From Klebsormidium nitens (taxonomy: Eukaryota > Plantae > Klebsormidiophyceae): a stretch of 64,000 nt of DNA. Shown in pieces: positions 10,654-24,138 of the stretch. The stretch lies in the NCBI GenBank assembly GCA_000708835.1, contig DF237321.1, positions 1 through 64,000 of the forward strand, given 5' to 3'. The position numbers and the translations under genes were made by a program. Every line of letters starts with the position of its first letter. The first letter of the stretch is position 1. The notes under the pieces are model-generated. The model saw only the letters and a program-made list of their open reading frames with translations. It did not search any database and was not told the DNA's origin.

Positions 10654-11454
10654 TCAGTCCTTCTTCTCGCTTTCGGTGCTCTCCACTTCCCAGGGGGCAG
10701 GCTTGAGTTGGGCTTTCACGCGCTCCTCACGAGCTTGCACATTCATTTTGTAGATCTTATTCTGGAGTTCGTAGGCTGCGTCAACGAGGCTATTACTGTG
10801 ACGTCCCAGCTGTTCGCCACACAGAGCGCATGTCTGAACCACGCAAGTTCGCCCGTGGTTCCCTATTGCGGTCAGCAGCTCTGATGTCTCCTCTCTCGAG
10901 CGCGATTCTGCATTCGAGGTCCAGTCCTTTCCCCGATCCAGCTCAATTCGGCCAAGCTCTGGCAGGACCAGAGTCCACAGCTCCTCCTTGCCATTCCTGA
11001 TGTGGACCGCGCTGTCTTTGCCATCGAAGAGATGCACCAAGAAACATGCCAGGCTCTTTATTTTCTTTGAGCTGCCGGCGTTGTCCTGATCAAAGCCCTG
11101 CAGAACTTGGAGCAGACCCCGTGCGAACGCCCGGGGGAACTCTGCTTCATGTGCACGCCAGCAGTCGAGCAGGCGAGCAGCGTGCACCTTCATCTGGACC
11201 CTGCAATCAAAAAGCTCGCTGATGTCACACTCAGACACCTCATTCAGAATCCAGGGGACGACGACAGAAGGAGAAGCGGCTGCTTTCTTCTCGAGTGTCT
11301 TCTCGGAGTGGAAGTTCTTCTCCAGTTGGCTCGTCTCTTCAGGTTGAACCTTCACAGGCAGATCTGGTGCCATATCCTTCTCGAGCTTCTCGGGGACGTT
11401 GTCCTGCTTGGGGGACTTGCTTAGGGTGCGCTTCATTGCAGAAAATACGCCCAT
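10654..11454 (-). CDS. 266-aa single-exon protein, probable MIF4G-like helical domain (SLIP1/CTIF/PAIP1-like)
   Basis: Uninterrupted ATG-initiated ORF. A charged N-terminal tail is followed by helical segments AFARGLLQVLQ, LACFLVHLFD and CGEQLGRH, which resemble motifs I recall from MIF4GD/SLIP1. The family call is from memory, not a search. Confidence 0.6.
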   Translation of the reverse strand: MGVFSAMKRTLSKSPKQDNVPEKLEKDMAPDLPVKVQPEETSQLEKNFHSEKTLEKKAAASPSVVVPWILNEVSECDISELFDCRVQMKVHAARLLDCWRAHEAEFPRAFARGLLQVLQGFDQDNAGSSKKIKSLACFLVHLFDGKDSAVHIRNGKEELWTLVLPELGRIELDRGKDWTSNAESRSREETSELLTAIGNHGRTCVVQTCALCGEQLGRHSNSLVDAAYELQNKIYKMNVQAREERVKAQLKPAPWEVESTESEKKD

Positions 11455-12004: not shown

Positions 12005-15000
12005 ATGGCGAGCGGCAAAGGTGAGTTGTTCGACGTTAGCGATGCTCCTTGCATGTTGAACAGCTGGTCTCGAGGTGTCTTTCTCCTGCTCCGTTCGATC
12101 ATTATTTTGCAAACAGGTGTTGACTCGTTCAAGCACGCTTTCCCCGGTGTTGTGCTGTGAAGAAACTTCTGTAAGAGTACTTCTCGTTAAAGTTTTGAAG
12201 GATTTGCTGGCTTTGCGAAACACCTCATCTGAATTCCAATGATGTAGCAAGCTGTGCTTCTGTGATTGTGGTTTGTTCAAAATCATTCCAACTTTGATTC
12301 TACTGATTCCAGGAAGAGAAAGGTTCCTGTTGCTTAGCAACACTTCCTTCTGTTCTAGAACGTCCTTCCAGCATTACTTTGCTCGGTATCGTTTCCCGAT
12401 TGAGAGCTTTTTGAACGTCTTTGTTCAAAACCTATCTTAAAAGCTCTCAAAAGCTCTCCAAACTTTTGTCCGTGTGCCATGAGTCCTAGCAGGTCAATGG
12501 TACTATGTGCGAGTGGTCATAGAGTCTTATGTTTGGAGGTCGAGAGTATGTTGGTCTGAAGTCCAGCTGTTTGTTTTGGAAGAAGAGCTGAAACAGCCCC
12601 AGAACGCCTTGAAGACTTACATTGACATACCGTGTTTCAGGGAACTGTCTGAATCACAGGATTACTTTGTGACAACTCAGAAAGCTCGGCTCCACTAACA
12701 TCGTACTACTTCGTATGCTTTCTATGATAAGCATCGGAACCTTGTCTTGTTCAGATCCCACAAGTACGACGCTTCTACTCTCTTTCCAGTGACGTCTTTG
12801 GCTTCTCGAGGTGAACAAACTGCACTTTTCATGACGCCACGTCTCTGTCCCCTGGCAGGAACCCCGGGGGAGTACCCCGACTGGCAGCAGTACGCAGAAT
12901 GCCTGACAAGCGACACCCGGTGGAGCACGCATCTCTCCACCGACAAACTGGTGTACCGACCCGGTGACACCGTCCACATCCGCGCAGTGCTGCTCCACCC
13001 CATCACGGGGGCGCCGGTGTCAAAGGAGCCGTCTGCTTATGGAAAGGACGGTACCGTAAAGGTAAGGAGTTTCTCTAATGGTATCAGACCCGTATTAGGC
13101 AATGGACCTCCTCTTTTTCTGTTGGTGACCTGAGAAGCCAACTTTCCAAGATCCCGCAGAATTCCTGAGCATCAATGTTTCTGCGGTGGAGAGGAAAAGT
13201 GGCTGAACTTGACATGAAAGTGTTGGGAACCAAAGGCACCGTGACCAATTTGCATGACCCAAATGTTCGTCTGAACAAAAGAAGACGGGGCGTTGCTCGT
13301 ACGCCTCTTCCTATTTTCTACATAAATTCTTTCTAAATTTCGCTCGTTTCCTCGACAGGTCATGTCTCCCAAGGGCAGCGTAGAAGCCTCTGTCGCTACG
13401 AGTCAGCCAGAGGACAGCGTGGCTTACGCCATGTGGCGAGTCCCCGAGAGCCTGCCCGGAGGAGAATACACTCTGAAACTGGAATACTCTGAATATAACC
13501 AGATGAGATGCAGCCCCTCGGCGGAGAGGAAGATCCAGATCCGCAACTTTCGGAACCCGAAGCTGAACGTGAGGGTGGAGTTTCTGGGGAGGGGGTACGG
13601 ACCAGGAGACGAGGTTCGTGCAAAGGTGAGGGGTGTTTTGCTCTTTACCCACCAAGTGACAGATAGGTCTGAAGCGAGAAATCACTGCTATTGCATAGCA
13701 GAAGGAGGATGGTCTGCTGCCGATCTGCGAACTGCAAGTGTGTTTGATCAGAGAAGCAACGCAGGAGTGAAAATCCACGGGAAGAACGGAGTTTGAGAGC
13801 TACTTCGAGAGCGGAAGGGAAAGAATTAGCGATCTCAAAAAAATTCGAACTTGCCTGAAGATCTTCAAAATCTATCGACATTCGAATCTGTCTTCCTTGC
13901 TTTTGGCTCGTAAGATCGTAATTTTGAGGATTATCATCTTGGTTACCTCTCCTTGAAAGACAAGGGAAATCTTGCGCCTCAACCCCCCTTTCTCGTTGGG
14001 TTTTGCAAACCTGAAAGATGACATCCCAGTTGCACTGTCATACCCCGACTCCCCGTTACCAAACACCTCCACCAACTTTTTCCCGTTTCGCTTGTCCAGG
14101 TTTCGGTTACCAGAGCCGAAGGCGGCCACCCTCCCGCCGGGACACGTGTCAATCTCTCCGCTCGCGTTGATGGCTGCAGCGTTTACTCCGAAAAGGGCGG
14201 CCTCGACGATTCGGGGGTGTGCTATACCACATTCAAACTGCCCCCCAAAATGGAAAAGGGTTTGGGCTCTCTGAGCGCCATGGTACGCGACGGGGGCCAC
14301 GTGGAGAGCGGCAGCAAGACGATCCCGATCGTGTTCCAAACGGTGGATGTAAAGTTCTACCCGGAGGGAGGGCCGCTCGTCCCTGGTAGGGTTTCGAGGT
14401 ATTGTCTGTTTGATTCTTGTATTTGAAAAACAAAGGCCCGTCCCACTGACAGGTCGGCGCTGGTCGGGGATCGTTTGTGCATTTCTGTCGAGCTCAAAAA
14501 GCCTTTTGGGAACTGTTCTGCTTGAATTCAAACTCCTCTGTGTCTCCACATAGAAAATTAAACAAAGTTCCAGATCCTTCAAACAAAAGTTGCACTCAAC
14601 ATACGGTTTTGGTCGTCGCTTTTTGAAAACGCTGTCTCCTTTCCATCATGTTCCGCCTTGTTTCGTAATCATTTTAAGAGAGCTTCTGTAGCTTCATAAG
14701 AACTTGGAGTACGTTTGGACCGGATTCTACTGGCATGCATCAATTCTTTCTCTCCGTTCGCTTGTGGCTGTTCCTTCGACCCTAACTAGAGCGAAGGACT
14801 TTCCTTGGAACTTGGACTTCGTAGTTGGACTTACTAGGAATCTCCCCAACTACATGCTTTGACTTGCAACCAATTAAACGGAATGGCGCCAGAGGCCAAA
14901 GAAAAGAGCGACATAACGAATAGTCCTCGTCCCGAAGGCTTTCGCTTTGATTGGTCAACCAGACGAGAAAATCTTGCCTTTTTCTGCAGGCCTCGAGAAC

Positions 15001-18000
15001 CGCGTCTACTTCGAAGCGCGCGACCCGAAAGAGGAGCCCCTCGAGGTTGCGGGCGAGGTGTGGGCAGTTGGTGGGAATGCGCCCCTCGCCACCTTTGCGG
15101 CAGTCCACGAAGGCCGCGGCCGGTTCGTGTTCACACCGACCATCGGCACCTACTACGAGGCCCGCATCACCAAGCCAAGCGGTATCACAAAACCGATCCG
15201 TTTGCCGCACGTGGAGTATCAGGCGAATCACGGGCTGCCACGTGTCGTCCTGAGAGTGAACTCCCCTGGTGCTGACGTCGAGATGACCGACGCTGGGACG
15301 CCGCAAAACCCCGGGGATTCCGTTCCCGTTTCCGTCGGGAGTTCCGCTCCGGCGAAGCTGCGTGTCGTGCTGTACAAGCGCGAGGTGGCCCTCAACCGCC
15401 AAGACATCGACATTTCCGCCGCGAGGGGCTTCCAGCAGGTGTCTCTGTACCCCCCGGGCGCGGAATATTCCGGCGTGCTGCGGGCGACCGTCTTCGCGGA
15501 GAGCCGCGACAAGAAGTGGACGCCCGTCGCGGAGCGGCTGGTCTTTCGAGCTCCAATCAACAAGCTCCACGTGGCAGTGTCTGGGGGCCCGGCCCAGGGG
15601 GGCGGGGTGGACTGCGTCCCCGGGGGGGGTGCCAAGGTGGAGGTTACGGTAACCGACGCGATTACCGGGGAGCCGATTAACGGAGCCGTGGTGGGTTTGA
15701 GCGTGGTTGACAACATTAATCTGGAACTGGTGGAGCCGCGCAGGCGCGCGCCGCGGCTCCCGTCCATGGCGCTTCTGGAGAACGAGGTAAGCGAAATAGA
15801 AAATGGGCTAAGGTAACCATGATGATGCTGGGACAAAGAGATAGGATCGTTTGACACGGTTAAGGTAAGCGTGCTGCTGGTATGACACAACAAAGAAGGC
15901 GTCAAGGGCCGCAAGAAAATAGTCTAGGGGGTCAACATTCTGCTTGTTTTCGATATTGAGTGGGAATCGAACATTCGGAATGATGTTCCTTGCAGTTGAA
16001 TGAAGTTAAGAGGAAGGAATGATTGAATGGATAAAAAGGCTCATGGCTGGTGCGCACGGTCATAAACTTCATGCTCTCCAGAAGCTGGCGCAGTCTCCGG
16101 TTTCGTTTCGTTCGCCTGCGACTCGCTCTCCATACGAAAATCCAAGCAGAGCGACAGATCCTCAATCCAACTTGTTAAAACACGAACAGAGACTCGTTCC
16201 GACTTTTCAAAACACAAACGGCAAGCTCGTCTAACGTGGATTGCCTATCTAACGACAGGTGAATCACCTCGAGGACTCCGCGGCCTACGTCGACGGCTCA
16301 GATCTGCCCGGCGGCTCAGATCCATCGTTGGCCGTCGATCTTTTGCTTGGCACCCAAGGCTGGCGTCGCTTCCTCTACCTGAACCCCTTGGAAAAGCTGA
16401 GGGGGTCTAGTGGTTCCAGCGAAAACAAGGTAAGTTGTGTCCCCTGCAATTCCTGAACGCAGCTTACCTTTGCATCGAACTTTGAGGCACCGTAAGCTTC
16501 GAAATCGAAATTGCAGAAAGTTCTCAGATCCTCAGATACATGAAACCCTGAAACCCCGAAACCCCGAAACCTGAAACCCTGAAATTCTGAAACCCTAAAC
16601 CCTCGAAACCCTGAAACTCTGCAACCCTGCAACCCTGCAACCCTGTAACCCCGGAAGCCTGAAACTCAACCTTGAAACCTTGCAACCTTGAAACCCTGAA
16701 ACCCTGAAACCCTGAAAACCCCTATCCAGGAAAAGTTTGAGCGCGCGGCCGGCGTGCGCGCTCTTGAGTACTGGAACCCCGAATGGGAGATGGCTCGCCG
16801 TAGCGGCCGTTATGAAAGCAGCCAGATCAGATCATTGGCCAGGGGTGAGGAGTCTGCGAGAATCGACCCCACAGACGGATATTACGACGGCCTTGAGGAG
16901 TCGGATGTCTGGGAATGCGATTCGGAGGAGGACGATTTCGCGGAGCCCGACGTGGACGAGGACTGGCTGCCTGCTGACGTGGCAGCTGACGTGGCGGCTG
17001 ACGTGGGCAGTGACGAAGAGGACGCAGGAGCGCAGCCCGAGCCAGCAGGTATGGTTTCGAATTGGGGTTTGGCTTTTGGCTAACCACCGCTCGGGTTGTG
17101 GCATCGTTCGCACAAATAGTTAGATGCTTTCGTGGTTAGGGCAGGCAGGGCAGCGTCACAATAAAACCACGCGAGCAAGGGAGTCAGTTTGCGCAACACG
17201 TGTTCAGCTTGAAAGCGAGATCAAGGCTTTATCTGGGCAGGGAAATCTCATCACGCGATTGCGCGGTACCATAAGCGTCAGTTCAGGTGTGCGTGGAAGA
17301 TATTCGGAGCCCAAGGCACCCTTCGAGATTCACGGTGTCTTAAAGAGAGGGTAAGCAAAGAGAGAGTAAACGAAGTTGCTCTATCGGCATGCCCAAGAGC
17401 CATTTTTCAGTTGATGAAATTACCGATTCTTTCAAGTTTTACCCATGATGCTATTGCCTTCTATGCTCGTCCTCTTCAATGCGCTTCTCAACTCATCCAG
17501 CAATTTCCAGTTATGCTTCTTTATGATTGTCCTCCTGTTTTGTCAGAGCGAGCGATACCGAAGAGACAGAAGCAGCATCACATCGTTCCGGTACGGGTCT
17601 ACGCTCACAGGCGTCCAAAGCAACAGTAAGTGATTCATCAGACTTATCGAGCGGAACATATCGTTTGAGTCAACAGATTGCGGGTTGCGAAGTTTCAATC
17701 GGACACTGTCGCACGTTTGTCGCATGCTATAACCTGTCGGGCAGCCAAAGGACGCTGGTTGGTTCCAAAACATTGTGTGGCTCGCAGCTTTTTCGTAGGC
17801 AACTAACTCGATGAGCGATTCTTGAGGGGTCGTAATAAGCGCCTCTCCTGTGTATGCTTGTCCAAGTGAATCTCTCTCGTTACGAAGCAGTTGCTCAGTA
17901 GACTCGCATTCTCTTCGCTTTTCTGAATGGTGAACGTTCGAACGTCCTCGCTCTCTGACGGTGCGACGCAAAAGAGGATCCTTATGTTTGCTGACGTTTC

Positions 18001-21000
18001 CCTTCCAGAAGCGTGCACGAACGGTCCGACTTCACGGAGACGGTCTACTTCGCCGCGTCCTTAGTTACGGACGCGCACGGCAAAGCGTGCGCCGAGTTTG
18101 ACGTCAGCGACTCGATCACGTCATTCGCCGTCATCGCCGACGCGCACAAGGAGGTAACGCTCGACCCTGAGACCGGGGCAACCGTTACCGCGTCCCCGAC
18201 CCAGAAATGGCGCAACATGCCGGGCAGCAAGTCGGCCGCCGTGGCCGCGTTCGCGGCAGGGGCCGCGCGGACGGTCCGCACCGTCGCGCTCGGGGCTTCG
18301 GACGGCGTTTTCAAGCTCCGGTCGGTGAAGCCGTTCTCGGTCGATGCCAAGTGCCCCCTGGAGCTGACAGCGGGCGACCGGGTGCTGCTACCGGTCACTC
18401 TGGCGAACGCGTCTCTCGAGCGACTCTCGGTCACCGCGCAGGTGGGATAATTCTCGTTTTAGGTTTAGGATTTTAGGGTTTAGGGTTTTAGGGTGCTGGG
18501 GCACTCACAGTACGACTTCGAGTCGGCTTGGCTGACGCTCTGCTTCCATTACTAACATCGTTGTTGTGTTATCGAACGTTGATAATAGAACTGCATGAAT
18601 ATATATAAAAGGTCATCCTGCCGGGCAAAAACATATTGAAAAACCTTCACTTTCACTGTACAAGCGCTCCCCACTTCAACACCCAAGCCAACCCAATCCG
18701 TCCCCGCGCTTGACGTCATCATCCATACGGCGTATCATTGATAGAAGCGAGTCTTTTGCAGGTGGGTGTCCGAGGGCCTTTGTCCCTGGAGGCGAGCCCC
18801 CCCGGAGGAAACTCAACCGGGGCCAACACCGCCGGACGCAAGTCATCCGGACCGGTACCGATGGACGTCGACACGCCGGGGGCATCCGAACCGGCCAGCT
18901 CAACGGTTCTCAAACAGAGCCTCGACGCCTCTAGAAGTGCCCGGGAGATCGTTCCGGTCGTGGCCGGAGGTGCCGCTCTCGCGGCCGCTTACAAGAGCAT
19001 GACGTCAGACGAGCCGAACCCCCTGCCAAGGGGCTTTGTGACGGTAAACGCCGCCGCGTCGTTTGGAGGGGGTGTCAAGAAAGGAGGGCTGGTTCTCAGG
19101 GACGAGATCAAGAGGGGTTTCGCAGTAACGCCCAAAGGCTTCCCTCAGGAGCAGTCAGCGGGGGGGATGTTGAAGCCGGGAACGAGGAGCGGAGGAGAGT
19201 TTGCGCTGCCGGAAGATACGCAGCCCGGGAGCGTGGTGACGTCTGTAACGGTGTTCCCGTGTCCGGTAGGTTTTCCTCGTCCTGCCATGCGATTCTTACC
19301 AAGAAATTCTTTTCTCGACTCCGCTGTAGGGCATTTCTCCTGATAATTCTAATGCTTACCATCGCTTCCTTCTTCGCCTTCACACTGTCATGCGATTCTT
19401 ATTCTAAGTTCTCGTCTTCATGCAACTCTTACCATTGGTGTTTTTTCCGTCTTTCATCTGTATGCGATTCTTACAAAAATACACAACTTGCATCGGAAAT
19501 GTTGACTCCGCTCACTTGGTAATAACTAAACTTGCCGTTCCTCATCAGCTGACGTTGGCTCTGCGCTTCCTTATCCTTGAAATTCCTTTTTGATCTTATG
19601 GGAAGGGAGCGGATGCACTTTACTTGCCAATTGGGCTAGCGGTTCCGATGCTCTTGTACCCTATTGTGTATCTAAACCACTCTCCACTTTTCGCCGGCAC
19701 GTTTCTGCTTCCAAACAGTTTGAGTCTTGACAGCACCTAACGCTGCTGATTTTGTTTCGCAGCTGGCCAACTTTTCCCAGTCCCTCTCAAACCTCGTCCG
19801 CGAACCGCAGTTATGCAAGGTCAGCCGTTAAGAAATGCCAGAAAAGAAGCTAAAATCATAGAAATGTTCTCTCCAACCCAGTGGTTCTCTTTTCGCAGCT
19901 GGCCAACTTTGCCCACTCCCTATCGGCGCTCGTCCGCGAACCGTACGGCTGCTTCGAACAAGCGTCCGCGACCATATACCCCAACATCCTGGCGCAACAG
20001 TACTTCAAGACGCATACTGGCTCGTCACCCTCGCTGGTGGAAAAGTCGTATACGCTATTGGGTCAGGGCCTGAAGAAACTGCGCGGCTATGAGGTGAACG
20101 GGAGCGGAGGGTACGAGTGGTTCGGGCATGCGCCGGCGCACGAGTCTATGACCGCGTATGGCCTGATGGAGTTCGTGGACATGGCGCAGGTGGGGAGCGC
20201 TTATGGCTACTCATTTGTTTTCGAAGTACGTTGCTATCATCTGCTTTGCAACGAGAGTATTCCTTCGGAGCCTATTTTGATCAATGAGTTCCAGTCACTA
20301 AATCGAACGGCTAGCCAAGCGGAGCCAGGCTTCCCTTAGGCGAGCGGCTCGTTGATAAAGCGGTAAAGTAAGGAGTTGAACGTTGTTTAGGATCATCAGG
20401 TTCAGTAACCGCTTCCGGGCCTACTCAACAGTAACTTATCAGACTCTCTCAGAACGCTTTGCGTCAGCTTTCTTGATATGTTCCTTGAACGAAGTAGGAA
20501 GCGAAGCCTTCTGGGATCGATTGAAAAACTAAGCCAAACTTCATGCGCTTTGCACCCGTACGGAAGGTAGCCCCCTAGGTGAATCACCCGTTCCAGTTTC
20601 TGTTCACTGAGCACACTTTTACAAACTCGACCAGTATGTAAGTAACCTCAGCCGTTTTGTTTCCAGGTGTACCCGGTCCCCGAGGATATGATCCGTCGCA
20701 CGCGCGCGTGGCTCCTCAGCCGCAAGGACGACTCCGCGCGCGCGTTCCGCATCAACCCCCGCCTGCTCGAGCACTTTGGCGGGGCCCCCGCTGACGTCAC
20801 TAACGCCTACATCGTCTGGGCGCTGACGTGTGCCCAGATGACGGACGGGTTTGAACCCCAGGCGAGTTCTCAACAGATTACGTTCTTTCCACCTCTTCTG
20901 TTCTCACTTCGGAGTCCGTATCTGGCAACACCTCTCTTCGAGGTTCTGAAACAACGTTGGTTTGATCCATCCGCTTGAAGACTGTTCCTTGCTGTGCGGT

Positions 21001-24000
21001 ATTATGCGGAATAATGCAGCCTACAATCTAAAACGAGGCCGGTTTCACAAGGTCAGGCTGGCCCTTTGTCCCTTCTCTTTCTCCCGACCATTGCAGCACG
21101 TGTGTCGCCCAGAGCACAAAGGGCTTGTCGAGTCCCCTGTTCTCCACCTTTTTCCCGCTTGAAACCGACGGTCTCTCTAGGTGCCGAACTGTGGAGATTA
21201 CAGATGGGGACCGGCTCGTTGCCGCACTGAAGCATGTGGGCTCTACATCTACCGGACGCGCATCTGAGGCGTTTCTCTTTTCTCCGCAGATTGCCAACCT
21301 CTTGGAGCAAACGGCGACCAACCGGGACCCTTACTTCACCGCCCTGGTCGCCAATTCGCTGTACAATCTGGGCCGCAAGGAGGAGGCCGCCGCGCTGGCT
21401 AAAAGACTCGAGATATCCCAGGTTAGAGGCTGTCTCCAGATCACTGATTCCATGAACGTACAACCCAAGCAAGTGAATCATGTCGCAAGTACTATCCCCC
21501 GACCACCACCTTTTGCCTCCGGCACGCGAAATTTTGATGAAACTAGAATCGAGAATTTGAGGGAGGTCTCCTTTCGTCGAGGGGCCGGTTCTTATTGATT
21601 TCGAATCAGCGAGCGCGGGAACCACCTACTTCGGTATAAGGTATTCGCGAGCGGCGTATACGGCGTGACACATGTCACCAGTACAGTTGCACGGCCTGCA
21701 GGAAAACAACTTTTTTATGCATCCAGAGATGCATCCAGTTTCTTGCACAGGCGATCTGTATCTCAGAGCGGCTAAAGGGGGTCTCGGGGTTTAACATAGA
21801 GAATTTGGAAATAGCTTCTAAGATTCCAGCCCCGTTGGAGACGTTTTCAAATTCAACACCCCGCAAAAGTATCCAAGACGTTCTTCAGAATCTGCAAAAG
21901 TTTCTGCAGAAGGAGGACGGTCACGTCGCCGGCGCCAAGACGTCCATCACGAGTTCCGGCGGAGAGTCGCTGCTCATCGAGACCACCGCCCTGACCACGC
22001 TCTGCTGGCTCAACGAGTACCAGGTAGGTTATCTACAAGTTGTATTCTAGATCGATCGAGACTTTCAGGAAATCAAACTATCCGTCAAATCTCTGCTTAT
22101 GAGGTCGATGCATACGTCATTCGCATAGCGACGCCATTGTCGCAGGGTGCGGCTCCAATTATCCCTTCGTTAGCGTAGTGAGGCTTTTATCATAAGGCGG
22201 ACCGTTCCTTTAGCTCTTGCGCAAATCTGGTCAGCGGCTGGTGTTGAGAAGCTGAGCGGGGCCTAAGTTCGCACGTCATCGGCGGGAGAAGGTCCTCAAG
22301 ACAGCGGAGCTTCCAAGTAGACTGCGCATGCGGATTGTGCAGATAAGCTCAAGCAATGATGCTTCCTGGCATGGAGGCGCAGCGGTCGAGAAATATAACG
22401 GTCATGGTCGAAGTAGTCCAAGCACTGAGCTTTGCGGTTTCTTCCGTCACCAGGTCTTTGGAGGCCGCATCCGCCGCGCCGTCGATTGGATCGCCTCCCG
22501 CTGCAACGGCGGCAAGTTCGGCTCCTCCCAGGGGACCGTGCTCGCGCTGAAAGCGATCGTCGCCTATGACGTCATGATGGCGTCAGAGCGCGCTCCGGGG
22601 ACCGTTCACCTGCTCGTGGACGGGGAGCGCGTCGAGAGCAAAGCGTTTGATGGGAAGACGGAGGGGACGATAGCGTTTGGGGACATAAGCGCGCGGCTGG
22701 CGGCGGACGGGCGTAAGAGGCGGGTGGAGGTGGAGATGGAGGGTGGCGCGGATATGCCGCACGCTATGCAGGTAAGCGCATAACGTAGCGTGCTTGACAA
22801 AAATATATCGCTTGGGTGACTTGGGATTCAAGGGCACCACTAGAATTTGTTGCTGCAGGTCTGAACGCTGAAAAAGACCTTCGAGAGCGTCACGGTCGAA
22901 TGAACAATTCTGAATGTCGGCGCTGGTGCTGATTTTGAGAGAAAAAACGAGTTTCAACCGTCATATTGGACCCTTGAGGTATTTTCTTTTGCCTTCCTCG
23001 AATCTGCGAAAGATGATATCTTGTGCGCACCTGCTATCAACTGTATCCACCGAGTCAACAAGAAGACACGTCCTTTGCACCCTCTACGCCTCGAGGCTTG
23101 CTGCTTCAGTCCTTCAAAGCATGATCAGCGCAACGGTATCTGACCTCGAATCTTTTCAATGATGCAGAACTCCCGTCTTGCATCGTTCAGATATCCATAA
23201 GAAAGTATTTGGCTTGGCGTGAAACCGCGTTTGTTCGCTCTCAGGTCTCATACTACTCGGAGCGCCCCAGCTCCGCGGCCGCGTGCGCTGTAGCGCTAGC
23301 GGCCGCGCTGCAGCAGCCGATCGCCAACGAGGGCGACCTTGTGGACATTCTTCTGACTGTGGAAAACAAGAAAGAGAGCGAAGCGCTGCCAATGACTATC
23401 GCCATTTTGGGCCTCCCAGGGGGGCTCGAGCCGCGCCCTGACCAACTGAGGGAGCTCGTCACGCGGGGCGACGTCGATTTGTACGAGGTGGGTTTTAGTT
23501 TCCAACTCAATACGGATGCTAAACAATAAGCCGAGTGAACAATAAAACGACATTTCTGAGACTGGTAGGGTTAGGTTGGGGTTCGGGTGGGTGCGTGCGG
23601 GATTGCAATACTCCTGGTTTTTATTTTCCCTTAGGAAAGGGCACTAATATAATCCAGGTCGTCGAGTTTCAGGGGCTTTGGCTGGTTGTCTACTCTCTGG
23701 CAGATTCCTGAATTCGCTCTTTCACCCTGTAGTTGTACATCAAGTGCGACACTTTTTCCTTCTTGGAAGCGGTTGCTAGTCTTAATCACCTTCTTAAAGT
23801 TCCTTCATCTGGTTTTTCCCAGCAGGACGCGACGTCTGTGAACGCCCCAAACTCATCAAGGACCTAGTTGAGCTGCCAATTCCAGTTGTCATGAGTACGA
23901 ATCCACGTCTGACTGACAAACCTGACCACTCCAACAATCATTTCTGCAGCTCCGCGGCCGCGACGTCATCTTCTACTGGCGCACCCTGGCAGCCAAGCAG

Positions 24001-24138
24001 AAGGTGACGCTGCGCTTGGAGGCGACCGCGGCAGTCCCTGGCGAGTATGTCGGCCCCGCCTCCCGAGCCTACCTCTATTACACCGACGAGCTCAAGACCT
24101 GGGCGGATCCCATCAAGTGCAGCATCGTTCCCAAGTAG
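12005..24138 (+). CDS. Alpha-2-macroglobulin family / thioester-containing protein, ~1500 aa, ~17 exons
   Basis: Exons join in phase: MG2-type STDKLVYRPGDTVHIR (12859-13061), VKFYPEGGPLV (~14100-14386), 14989-15786, DLLLGTQGWRRF (16260-16429), acidic exon 16730-17048, VRVYAH (17548-17627), RSDFTETVYF...FDVSDSITSF (18009-18441), thioester exon LVREPYGCFEQASATIYPN...GYEWFG...TAYGLMEF (19899-20189), NAYIVWAL, IETTAL, FGSSQGTVLALKA, LPMTIAILGLPGGLEP and receptor-binding-like YVGPASRAYLYYTDE..VPK* (stop 24136-24138). One GC donor (20862). The first exon MASGK (12005-12020) is less certain. Confidence 0.92.
16427..16470 (+). other. Predicted 14-bp pre-mRNA hairpin covering a 5' splice site of the macroglobulin gene
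   Basis: aag|gtaagttgtgt (16427-16440) pairs with acgcagcttacctt (16457-16470): 12 Watson-Crick plus 2 G-U pairs, 16-nt loop. Confidence 0.7.
16541..16723. repeat. Degenerate telomere-like tandem tract (CCCTGAAA/CCCTAAA variants), intronic
   Basis: More than 20 units such as aaaccctg, aaaccccg, aaacccta and caaccctg, ending a few nt before the acceptor at 16729. Confidence 0.85.
18457..18493. repeat. Interstitial telomeric repeat (TTTAGGG/TTTTAGGG), intronic
   Basis: ttttaggtttaggattttagggtttagggttttaggg, ~15 nt after the donor at 18442. Confidence 0.85.
19755..19807 (+). repeat. Intronic echo of the acceptor plus first 15 codons of the thioester exon
   Basis: tttcgcag|ctggccaacttttcccagtccctctcaaacctcgtccgcgaaccg versus the live tttcgcag|ctggccaactttgcccactccctatcggcgctcgtccgcgaaccg (19891-19943). 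Confidence 0.9.

What the first reader, a model, noticed from the sequence alone, without database searches (positions are those of the whole stretch)
12005..24138. Complete bacterial-type thioester alpha-2-macroglobulin in a green-lineage genome
Seen: an intact ~17-exon gene (~1500 aa) with macroglobulin domains, an acidic bait-like region, PYGCFEQ (codons 19947-19961) and a C-terminal receptor-binding-like domain. Established: CxEQ forms the Cys-Gln thioester of animal C3/C4/A2M/TEP and bacterial A2Ms; to my knowledge the family is not part of the standard land-plant gene set. The GCFEQ variant and the FYPEGG, DLLLGTQGWRRF and VRxYAH..RxDFxET motifs resemble, from memory, the A2Ms of Planctomycetota, Myxococcota and Bacteroidota rather than animal TEPs. 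Inference: an old horizontally acquired, intronised covalent protease trap or effector trap, i.e. a candidate unrecognised innate-defence system in streptophyte algae.
Basis: partly seen in the sequence, partly recalled or inferred. Interest (0 to 1): 0.85.

Follow-up and report, generated by a model that had tools for sequence, protein, structure and literature searches.

The report
Bacterial-type thioester macroglobulin in Klebsormidium
The window carries an intact, spliced and expressed 17-exon gene of the alga Klebsormidium nitens for a thioester alpha-2-macroglobulin whose nearest relatives are bacterial. GenBank already names it, but no paper I could find discusses it, and its role as a protease trap is untested.

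Summary
At 12005-24138 (+) lies a 17-exon, 1518-aa open gene with MG2, A2M and TED domains, GCFEQ at 19947-19961 and an MG8-like C-terminus.

It is not unrecognised. It is 100% identical in shared exons to GenBank 'alpha-2-macroglobulin [Klebsormidium nitens]'. RNA contigs from four runs confirm six splice junctions. They also correct one annotated junction: a GC-AG intron at 20862-21289.

K. nitens has three full-length paralogs, all with PYGCFEQ. They share most intron positions, have dN/dS of about 0.27, and differ most in the bait-like segment.

The nearest relatives at 35-44% identity form a large, uncharacterised bacterial subfamily, found in at least 571 species genomes (Planctomycetota, Myxococcota, Melainabacteria and others). 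Animal A2M/CD109 and E. coli YfhM match only weakly.

In trees the Klebsormidium clade, joined by one unidentified eukaryotic transcript, sits inside a bacterial clade, also when rooted on YfhM. An old bacterium-to-alga transfer is therefore well supported.

The defence or protease-trap role is inferred. No signal peptide is evident, unlike in the bacterial relatives.

The scan had noted the two paralogs before on other DNA of this genome.

Verdict: a new member of a known kind, of moderate interest.

The parts
12005..12020 (+). Candidate exon 1 (MASGK + 1 nt), donor AAG|GTGAGT; uncertain
   Evidence: Its phase fits the exon 2 acceptor. Paralog P0153 is annotated with a similar 8-aa first exon, MAAKGVKG. 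GenBank instead starts at ATG 12831. No RNA evidence was obtained here.
12859..13061 (+). Exon 2 (start of MG1/MG2-type domain)
13359..13625 (+). Exon 3
14100..14385 (+). Exon 4, holds FYPEGG (14355-14372)
14990..15786 (+). Exon 5 (largest, MG domains)
16259..16429 (+). Exon 6, holds DLLLGTQGWRRF (16337-16372), the hallmark motif of the subfamily
16730..17048 (+). Exon 7: acidic, poorly conserved bait-like segment
   Evidence: 20-38% identity between paralogs, and dN 0.65 against 0.13-0.27 elsewhere.
17547..17625 (+). Exon 8 (end of bait-like segment, VRVYAH)
   Evidence: Junction 17625|18009 is seen in an RNA contig.
18009..18441 (+). Exon 9 (A2M/MG7 domain, RSDFTET)
18762..19265 (+). Exon 10 (low-complexity insert plus first half of a CUB-like domain)
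   Evidence: Junction 19265|19899 is seen in an RNA contig. Strands are predicted in the model.
19899..20189 (+). Exon 11: start of the TED; thioester motif PYGCFEQ at 19941-19961
20667..20861 (+). Exon 12 (TED), followed by the GC-AG intron 20862-21289
   Evidence: RNA contig X2 joins 20858-20861 to 21287-21290. The GenBank model differs here.
21290..21421 (+). Exon 13 (TED)
   Evidence: (junction, and a loose end at 21907).
21910..22023 (+). Exon 14 (TED)
   Evidence: Junction 22023|22454 is seen in two runs.
22454..22771 (+). Exon 15 (end of TED, second half of CUB-like domain)
   Evidence: Junction 22771|23245 is seen.
23245..23487 (+). Exon 16 (MG8/receptor-binding-like domain)
23950..24138 (+). 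Exon 17 with stop codon 24136-24138
19755..19807 (+). Echo of the exon-11 acceptor and first 45 nt, inside intron 10; not part of the observed mRNA
   Evidence: 87% identical to 19891-19943. It is skipped by RNA contig X1.
17303..17350 (+). Alternative exon in intron 7, joined to exon 8 in one RNA contig; carries an in-frame TAA at 17341-17343. The start coordinate is approximate.
   Evidence: Loose end of X3 record 6; sequence.

Best explanation
This is the Klebsormidium nitens gene that GenBank annotates as alpha-2-macroglobulin. It is an intact, transcribed, 17-exon member of the A2M/TEP thioester-protein superfamily. It belongs to a large, experimentally uncharacterised subfamily that is mainly bacterial, marked by GTQGWRRF and PxGCFEQ. 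It most likely entered the Klebsormidium lineage by an old transfer from a bacterium; the nearest named relatives are Planctomycetota and Sumerlaeota MAGs. After transfer it gained introns and host-like expression and duplicated into three paralogs. By homology it should work as a spring-loaded thioester protein. Cleavage or disturbance of the variable, acidic bait-like segment (aa 581-712) would release the TED from the MG8-like domain. The exposed Cys-Gln thioester would then bind covalently to a nearby protein, a protease in the A2M mode. Shown here: gene structure, expression and splicing, domain content, family placement, purifying selection and the fast-evolving bait segment. Inferred: thioester formation, bait cleavage, the target, and the cell compartment. 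The confidence figure of 0.7 is a blend: about 0.9 for identity and family, about 0.8 for bacterial origin, and about 0.5 for the protease-trap mechanism.
For: Identity: my model is 100% identical to P0154 outside one junction and the start. Expression: spliced contigs in 4 runs from 2 studies confirm six junctions. Domains: Pfam scores above the gathering thresholds. Fold: the AF2 model of aa 696-1575 of P0154 (pLDDT 77.8, pTM 0.70) matches native C3, C5, A2ML1, CD109 and TEP1 at TMq 0.54-0.60, native ECAM MG7-to-C-terminus at TMt 0.74, but C3b only at about 0.27. Subfamily: collinear 35-44% identity over the full length to bacterial proteins at about 850 bits, against E 4e-12 for CD109 and 2e-5 for YfhM, limited to the TED. 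At least 571 bacterial species genomes encode relatives that carry one or both motifs. Trees: (P0002,(Kn,Kn)) at 100*, inside a 12-row clade (95*) with bacterial proteins, also when rooted on E. coli YfhM. Residence and function: three full-length paralogs all have PYGCFEQ. At least 12 of 16 intron positions are shared with paralog 2. dN/dS is 0.235/0.87, and bait dN is 0.65. Exons are 64% GC (GC3 0.78) against 47% in introns.
Against: No biochemical evidence exists for a thioester or for protease capture. None of the K. nitens proteins shows an N-terminal hydrophobic signal, whereas the bacterial relatives do, so an extracellular trap is not assured. One RNA contig carries an alternative exon with an in-frame stop before exon 8, and the exon 7/8 junction has no RNA support here. 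The donor lineage is unresolved, because the sister rows are mostly unnamed metagenomic proteins. The YfhM outgroup branch is very long. Animal TEPs and the prasinophyte A2MFs reported in PMC9156758 could not be put in the tree. The loop that holds the catalytic His of C3 and CD109 is two residues shorter here, so the chemistry of the thioester cannot be read off.
Confidence: 0.7

Rival explanations
1. The gene is an ancient, vertically inherited eukaryotic thioester protein, kin of animal TEP/C3/A2M, that was lost in most green plants rather than acquired from bacteria.
For: In the best trees the K. nitens proteins group with two other eukaryotic sequences: an unidentified EukProt transcript at 100*, and Anaeramoeba ignava at 99* in FastTree but only 77 under the mixture model. 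In the PDB, CD109 and A2M score better than E. coli YfhM.
Against: Full-length identity to bacterial proteins is 35-44%, whereas animal proteins match only in the TED at about 47 bits. The eukaryote rows sit inside a bacterial clade, also with the YfhM root. Bacterial members span more than 10 phyla and at least 571 species. Among named eukaryotes only K. nitens and Anaeramoeba appear in the best 120 hits of two searches.
Confidence: 0.1
2. The protein is a functional thioester protein but not a protease inhibitor. It could tag surfaces or particles covalently in the C3/TEP-like opsonin mode. Alternatively it could act inside the cell or as a sensor, as suggested by bacterial relatives fused to anti-sigma factors.
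For: No signal peptide is evident. Several bacterial relatives carry an N-terminal zf-HC2 anti-sigma domain, or directly follow an ECF sigma gene, which points to a sensing role in that subfamily. Insect TEPs have no demonstrated protease-inhibitory activity (PMC9156758, section 12).
Against: The acidic segment that evolves fastest between paralogs lies where A2M baits lie. The bacterial A2Ms tested so far, ECAM and the Salmonella A2M, inhibit proteases (PMC9156758, section 12). No domain that would pass on a signal is present in the algal protein.
Confidence: 0.25
3. The locus is bacterial contamination of the assembly, or a decaying pseudogene.
For: The nearest relatives are bacterial.
Against: The gene has sixteen spliceosomal introns. 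Spliced RNA contigs exist. Neighbours in the same 64-kb window are interrupted genes of their own (a beta-ketoacyl synthase piece and a PDS5/HEAT piece). Two paralogs lie on other scaffolds of GCA_000708835.1 beside eukaryote-type genes. The 1518-aa frame is open and dN/dS is about 0.27.
Confidence: 0.01

Closest known systems
Bacterial proteins annotated 'A-macroglobulin complement component' or 'MG2 domain-containing protein' (Planctomycetota, Phycisphaerae, Myxococcota, Melainabacteria, Lentisphaerota, Kiritimatiellota, Sumerlaeota, some Gammaproteobacteria); about 1350-1450 aa; no experimental study found
   Same: They are collinear over the full length at 35-44% identity. They share the invariant motifs FYPEGG, DLLLGTQGWRRF, RxYAH...DFTET and PxGCFEQ, and the same Pfam domain set.
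   Different: The bacterial proteins have N-terminal signal peptides, or zf-HC2 anti-sigma plus membrane parts, and no introns. The algal protein has 16 introns, no evident signal peptide, a longer and more acidic bait-like segment, and two low-complexity inserts at about aa 751-800 and 858-905.
E. coli ECAM (YfhM) and Salmonella A2M: periplasmic lipoprotein protease traps with a CLEQ thioester (PDB 4ziq, 4ziu, 5a42, 4u48)
   Same: Both are monomer-sized thioester A2M-family proteins. The predicted MG7-CUB-TED-MG8 half superposes on native ECAM (4ziu, TMt 0.74).
   Different: The sequence match is weak and limited to the TED (E 2e-5). ECAM has two extra N-terminal MG domains (PMC9156758) and a lipoprotein signal, and its gene lies next to pbpC. 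ECAM has CLEQ, not GCFEQ. In the tree it sits on a very long separate branch.
Animal A2M, A2ML1, CD109, insect TEP1 and complement C3/C4/C5
   Same: Same overall architecture and native-state fold of the C-terminal half (TMq 0.54-0.60 to native C3, C5, A2ML1, CD109 and TEP1). These are the best PDB sequence matches in the TED. Total length is similar.
   Different: Identity is only about 15% in the structural alignments. The motif is GCFEQ instead of GCGEQ. The loop holding the His or Asn that tunes thioester chemistry is two residues shorter. There is no signal peptide, and no ANA or C345C domains. No animal sequence was available for the tree.
A2M-family proteins of prasinophyte green algae (Micromonas commoda, Pycnococcus provasolii, Bathycoccus prasinos) reported in PMC9156758 as probable transfers of metazoan origin
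   Same: They are A2M-family genes with a patchy occurrence in green algae, interpreted as horizontally acquired.
   Different: They were found with an animal CD109-like query and ascribed to a metazoan source. That search did not report Klebsormidium. They do not appear among the best 120 relatives of the K. nitens protein, so they are probably a separate acquisition. This was not tested directly.

Membership tests
A2M/TEP/complement thioester-protein superfamily | N-terminal macroglobulin (MG) domains | tested here: met
   Pfam MG2 scores 54.7 bits against a cut-off of 32.8 on P0154, with exon-level hits.
A2M/TEP/complement thioester-protein superfamily | A2M (MG7) domain | tested here: met
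   PF00207 scores 30.7 bits against a cut-off of 21, and 38.7 bits on exon 9 alone.
A2M/TEP/complement thioester-protein superfamily | Alpha-helical thioester domain with a CxEQ motif | tested here: met
   PF07678 scores 73.9 bits against a cut-off of 22. GCFEQ lies at 19947-19961. The predicted helical domain spans residues 334-673 of the model.
A2M/TEP/complement thioester-protein superfamily | C-terminal MG8/receptor-binding-type beta-sandwich packed on the TED in the native state | tested here: met
   The Pfam hits are just below their cut-offs (bMG10 21.4 against 26.2; A2M_recep 18.9 against 21.7). The AF2 model has the C-terminal sandwich at pLDDT about 90. It matches native C3, A2ML1 and ECAM much better than C3b. 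This is a prediction, not a structure.
A2M/TEP/complement thioester-protein superfamily | Exposed, protease-sensitive bait region between the MG6 halves | tested here: inconclusive
   A 132-aa acidic segment (aa 581-712) lies at the expected place and is the least conserved part between paralogs (20-38% identity, dN 0.65). Cleavage was not tested.
A2M/TEP/complement thioester-protein superfamily | Formation and reactivity of the Cys-Gln thioester | not testable with these tools
   This needs protein chemistry: methylamine incorporation, autolytic cleavage and covalent complexes.
A2M/TEP/complement thioester-protein superfamily | Export to an extracytoplasmic compartment (signal peptide or lipobox); usual in the family rather than strictly defining | tested here: not met
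   The maximum 9-residue hydropathy in the first 45 aa is 0.0-0.8 for the K. nitens proteins, against 2.6-3.1 for bacterial relatives. A longer alternative exon 1 (12005-12116) would add a weak hydrophobic stretch; this is unverified.
Bacterial GTQGWRRF / PxGCFEQ A2M subfamily ('A-macroglobulin complement component') | Subfamily motifs and full-length collinearity | tested here: met
   All the motifs are invariant in alignment A1. tblastn shows collinear matches to P0004, P0007 and P0012. Identity is 36-38% over about 1500 columns.
Bacterial GTQGWRRF / PxGCFEQ A2M subfamily ('A-macroglobulin complement component') | Placement inside the subfamily in a tree | tested here: met
   Searches place it in a 12-row clade (SH-aLRT 95) with Planctomycetota and Sumerlaeota MAG proteins. 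The root on YfhM falls elsewhere.
ECAM/YfhM-type bacterial A2M | Two extra N-terminal MG domains, lipoprotein signal, CLEQ motif, pbpC neighbour | tested here: not met
   The protein is 1518 aa against 1653 aa. There is no lipobox, the motif is GCFEQ, and the sequence match is only E 2e-5 in the TED.
Animal TEP/A2M/CD109 clade | Closer kinship to animal proteins than to bacterial ones | tested here: not met
   The best animal match is 47 bits in the TED only, against about 850 bits over the full length for bacterial proteins. No tree with animal sequences could be built.

The most novel reading that the evidence does not exclude
Klebsormidium runs a small family of three thioester 'trap' proteins, domesticated from bacteria, as a surveillance or defence layer. 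Each has its own fast-evolving bait. They would be delivered without a classical signal peptide, either staying in the cytosol or exported through an alternative first exon. Anaeramoeba and an unidentified protist would have taken over the same bacterial subfamily. In the bacterial donors, versions fused to anti-sigma factors would act as protease-sensing switches for ECF sigma factors.
Probability: 0.25. Interest if true: 0.7.

Novelty: new member of a known kind. Interest (0 to 1): 0.45.

Why it matters
Thioester proteins (A2M, TEP, C3) are a pillar of animal innate immunity, and there is a long-standing debate about gene flow between animals and bacteria. Here a streptophyte alga near the base of the land-plant lineage keeps three expressed copies under purifying selection, with divergent bait-like segments. 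That gives a tractable, non-animal eukaryote in which to test what a thioester trap does. A published search for A2M-family genes in green plants (PMC9156758) did not report it. The case also draws attention to a very large bacterial subfamily, in hundreds of species, that nobody seems to have studied. Some of its members are wired to ECF sigma/anti-sigma pairs. The finding is not new at the level of annotation, and no function has been shown.

Tried and rejected
- NCBIfam and PADLOC gave no hit for the algal protein or its bacterial relatives.
- Six paper searches found nothing on this gene family in these organisms: Klebsormidium, charophyte or streptophyte with macroglobulin or thioester protein, Anaeramoeba with macroglobulin, and Planctomycetes with macroglobulin. 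The classic paper on the origin of bacterial A2Ms was not in the searchable library.
For three loci (L005, L006, L046) my 'longest ORF' pick was the wrong ORF; they gave very long branches and were left out afterwards.
- An in-frame intron inside exon 9 (the 18154 donor) was considered and rejected, because no acceptor lies in the right phase. RNA contig X1 record 1 is contiguous from 18009 to 18216.
- A GT donor for intron 12 was considered and rejected. The only nearby GT gives the wrong phase, and RNA supports GC-AG.
- The organism behind the EukProt transcript P0002 could not be identified.
- The ESM Atlas look-up only repeated the family assignment.
- Reading the C3 His / A2M Asn position from the alignment was inconclusive because of a two-residue gap.
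Full report
**1. What is in the sequence**

Six-frame ORFs between 12.0 and 24.2 kb on the + strand form a chain of coding pieces. Pfam assigns these pieces to MG2, A2M_BRD (weak), A2M (8.8e-10) and TED_complement (3.2e-9).

I read the DNA and set each exon edge by frame and splice consensus. This gave 17 exons, a 4557-nt CDS and a 1518-aa protein without an internal stop. Fifteen introns are GT-AG and one is GC-AG (20862-21289).

FYPEGG, DLLLGTQGWRRF and VRVYAH...RSDFTET are also present.

**2. Whose gene it is**

A search of 1.84 billion representative proteins with exon 5 gave 883 hits. The best full-length ones were about 40% identical.

Two word-index searches then returned 'alpha-2-macroglobulin [Klebsormidium nitens]' (P0154, 1575 aa). 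My model is 100% identical to it, with two exceptions:
- the start: GenBank uses ATG 12831, in frame with exon 2;
- a 57-aa insert at the exon 12/13 junction.

The window is thus K. nitens, and the gene is already named in GenBank and UniProt. The assembly of the two paralog loci is GCA_000708835.1.

No paper in the searchable library mentions Klebsormidium, charophytes or streptophytes together with macroglobulin or thioester proteins. The one published search for A2M-family genes in green plants used an animal CD109-like query. It reported only three prasinophyte sequences, which it ascribed to transfer from metazoa (PMC9156758, section 28).

**3. Expression and splicing**

No run is on record as RNA. 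However, contigs of four runs from two studies, all labelled with the same organism, lie on 17400-23399 in spliced form. They show these junctions:
- 17625|18009
- 19265|19899
- 20861|21290
- 22023|22454, seen in two runs
- 22771|23245
- 21421|21910, supported by a loose end that fits it

All agree with my model.

The 20861|21290 junction needs a GC donor and contradicts the GenBank model. The extra 57 aa of that model are absent from all homologues. They get pLDDT below 50 in the fold.

One contig joins an exon ending at 17350 to exon 8. In the frame of exon 8 that exon carries TAA at 17341-17343, so it marks an alternative or unproductive isoform. The exon 7/8 junction itself was not covered.

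**4. Family in the genome**

K. nitens has two more copies. One is P0153 (KFL_005520040, 65% identical). The other is split in the annotation into an 872-aa and a 686-aa model (P0268 and its neighbour). Both loci are collinear with the whole window protein, and both encode PYGCFEQ. The scan's earlier notes s1-316264 and s1-332518 evidently refer to these copies.

- At least 12 of the 16 intron positions of the window gene coincide with those annotated in P0153.
- The introns after aa 857 and aa 1269 are absent from both paralogs.
- Between the window gene and P0153, dN is 0.235 and dS is 0.87.
- The bait-like segment (aa 581-712) has dN 0.65 and only 20-38% identity. The other regions have dN 0.13-0.27.
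- A Logan contig from another sample encodes an exon 5 that is 82% identical to the third paralog. A related organism therefore carries the family too.

**5. Relatives**

After the paralogs, the best hit is an unidentified EukProt transcript (P0002, 39-47% identical). Hundreds of uninterrupted proteins of about 1400 aa follow, on bacterial contigs. Where these have names, they are called 'A-macroglobulin complement component' or 'MG2 domain-containing protein' of Planctomycetota, Phycisphaerae, Myxococcales, Sumerlaeota or Riflebacteria.

These also include Melainabacteria, Lentisphaerota, Kiritimatiellota, Acidobacteriota, several Gammaproteobacteria and one Flavobacteriales MAG.

Anaeramoeba ignava is the only other named eukaryote.

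Against solved structures, the whole protein matches only in the TED:
- CD109: 4e-12
- human A2M: 3e-11
- E. coli YfhM: 2e-5

**6. Trees**

- FastTree on 135 rows gave (Anaeramoeba,(P0002,(three K. nitens copies))) at 99*, among bacterial rows.
- IQ-TREE with the C20 mixture model on 55 rows kept (P0002,(Kn,Kn)) at 100*. It placed this group in a 12-row clade (95*) with proteins of a Planctomycetes MAG, a Sumerlaeia MAG and unnamed metagenomic contigs. Anaeramoeba joins the other eukaryotes at only 77, which neither shows nor rejects the grouping.
- With E. coli YfhM added as outgroup, the root falls in the deep bacterial polytomy, and the eukaryote rows stay inside the same 95* clade.

The outgroup branch is very long, so this is supporting evidence rather than proof. 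Still, long-branch attraction would have pulled the root towards the long eukaryote branches, and it did not.

With the taxon counts, transfer from bacteria to the alga is the economical reading. The donor phylum is not resolved. One origin for all the eukaryotic copies, or several, remains an open question.

**7. Fold**

I folded the C-terminal 880 residues of P0154 with a 37-row alignment. The model reached pLDDT 77.8 and pTM 0.70. In order it shows beta domains, a helical TED, a further beta part and a C-terminal sandwich.

Foldseek matched it as follows:
- native C3, C5, A2ML1, CD109, frog A2M and TEP1: TMq 0.54-0.60
- native ECAM, MG7 to C-terminus: TMt 0.74
- C3b: only about 0.27

The model therefore has the closed, 'loaded' arrangement.

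**8. How it probably works**

By homology the protein is a spring-loaded thioester protein with three predicted steps:
- a protease cuts the exposed bait;
- the TED is released from the MG8-like domain;
- the thioester reacts with a nearby nucleophile and ties the attacker to the trap.

What the data show is that all the parts are present, that they are conserved under selection, and that the bait is the fastest-changing part. Everything else is inference.

The largest open point is location. Bacterial relatives begin with signal peptides. The three algal proteins, P0002 and the Anaeramoeba protein do not. A second isoform of the EukProt gene (P0151) adds a hydrophobic N-terminus. In the window, a longer exon 1 (12005-12116, same phase) would add GVFLLLRSIIIL. 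Both are leads only.

The loop that carries the His of C3 and CD109, or the Asn of A2M, is two residues shorter here. The chemistry of the thioester therefore cannot be predicted.

**9. Verdict**

The reading as a bacterial-type, transferred and intronised gene is well supported. 'Unrecognised' holds for the literature but not for the databases. The defence role is a reasonable hypothesis without direct evidence.

The finding is a new member of a known kind. It has moderate interest, raised somewhat by the unstudied bacterial subfamily and by its links to anti-sigma factors.

Noticed in passing
window 19755-19807 (and L081 13708-13767): A copy of the exon-11 acceptor plus its first 45 nt, 87% identical, lies 136 nt upstream inside intron 10. 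The observed transcript skips it. Read in frame, it encodes LANFSQSLSNLVREPQLCK, so it stops just short of the thioester motif. Paralog 2 has a similar copy of the end of its exon 11 in the following intron. This fits the 'echo' units that the scan noted elsewhere in this genome.
   Followed up: partly
window 16541-16717 and 18456-18494: Telomere-like 8-mer arrays lie inside introns 6 and 9: TGAAACCC x22 and GTTTTAGG x5.
   Followed up: no
window 17303-17350 (start approximate): One RNA contig joins an exon ending at 17350 to exon 8. The exon has an in-frame TAA at 17341-17343. It may be a poison exon or an unproductive isoform placed just before the A2M/TED half.
   Followed up: partly
window 20829-21289: The GenBank model of this gene appears to use a different splice here, inferred from where its protein departs from my model (after ALT, resuming about 21098). 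This adds 57 aa inside the TED. RNA supports a GC-AG intron at 20862-21289, and the added residues fold with pLDDT below 50.
   Followed up: yes
window 18442-18761 and 22024-22453: These two introns of the window gene are absent from both K. nitens paralogs. Either the window gene gained them after duplication, or the other two copies lost them.
   Followed up: partly
L083 5502-10761; P0007, P0103, P0130: In bacteria some members of the subfamily are fused to an N-terminal zf-HC2 anti-sigma domain (P0007: 33.3 bits, above the cut-off). In one case (P0283) the gene overlaps the end of an ECF sigma-factor gene. This suggests an A2M-like extracytoplasmic sensor that controls a sigma factor.
   Followed up: partly
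L082 10001-21817: The third K. nitens paralog is split in the annotation into two gene models of 872 aa and 686 aa. It is collinear with the whole window protein and has PYGCFEQ, so it is probably a single gene.
   Followed up: partly
window 12005-12116: If the first donor is skipped, exon 1 can run on to a second phase-compatible donor (CAG|GTGTTG at 12116/12117). This adds a weakly hydrophobic stretch. Two isoforms of the EukProt relative likewise differ by a hydrophobic N-terminus.
   Followed up: no
window 10654-11454 (- strand): A 266-aa ATG-started ORF with no Pfam match runs away from the A2M gene. About 550 bp separate the two start codons, which looks like a shared divergent promoter region.
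   Followed up: no
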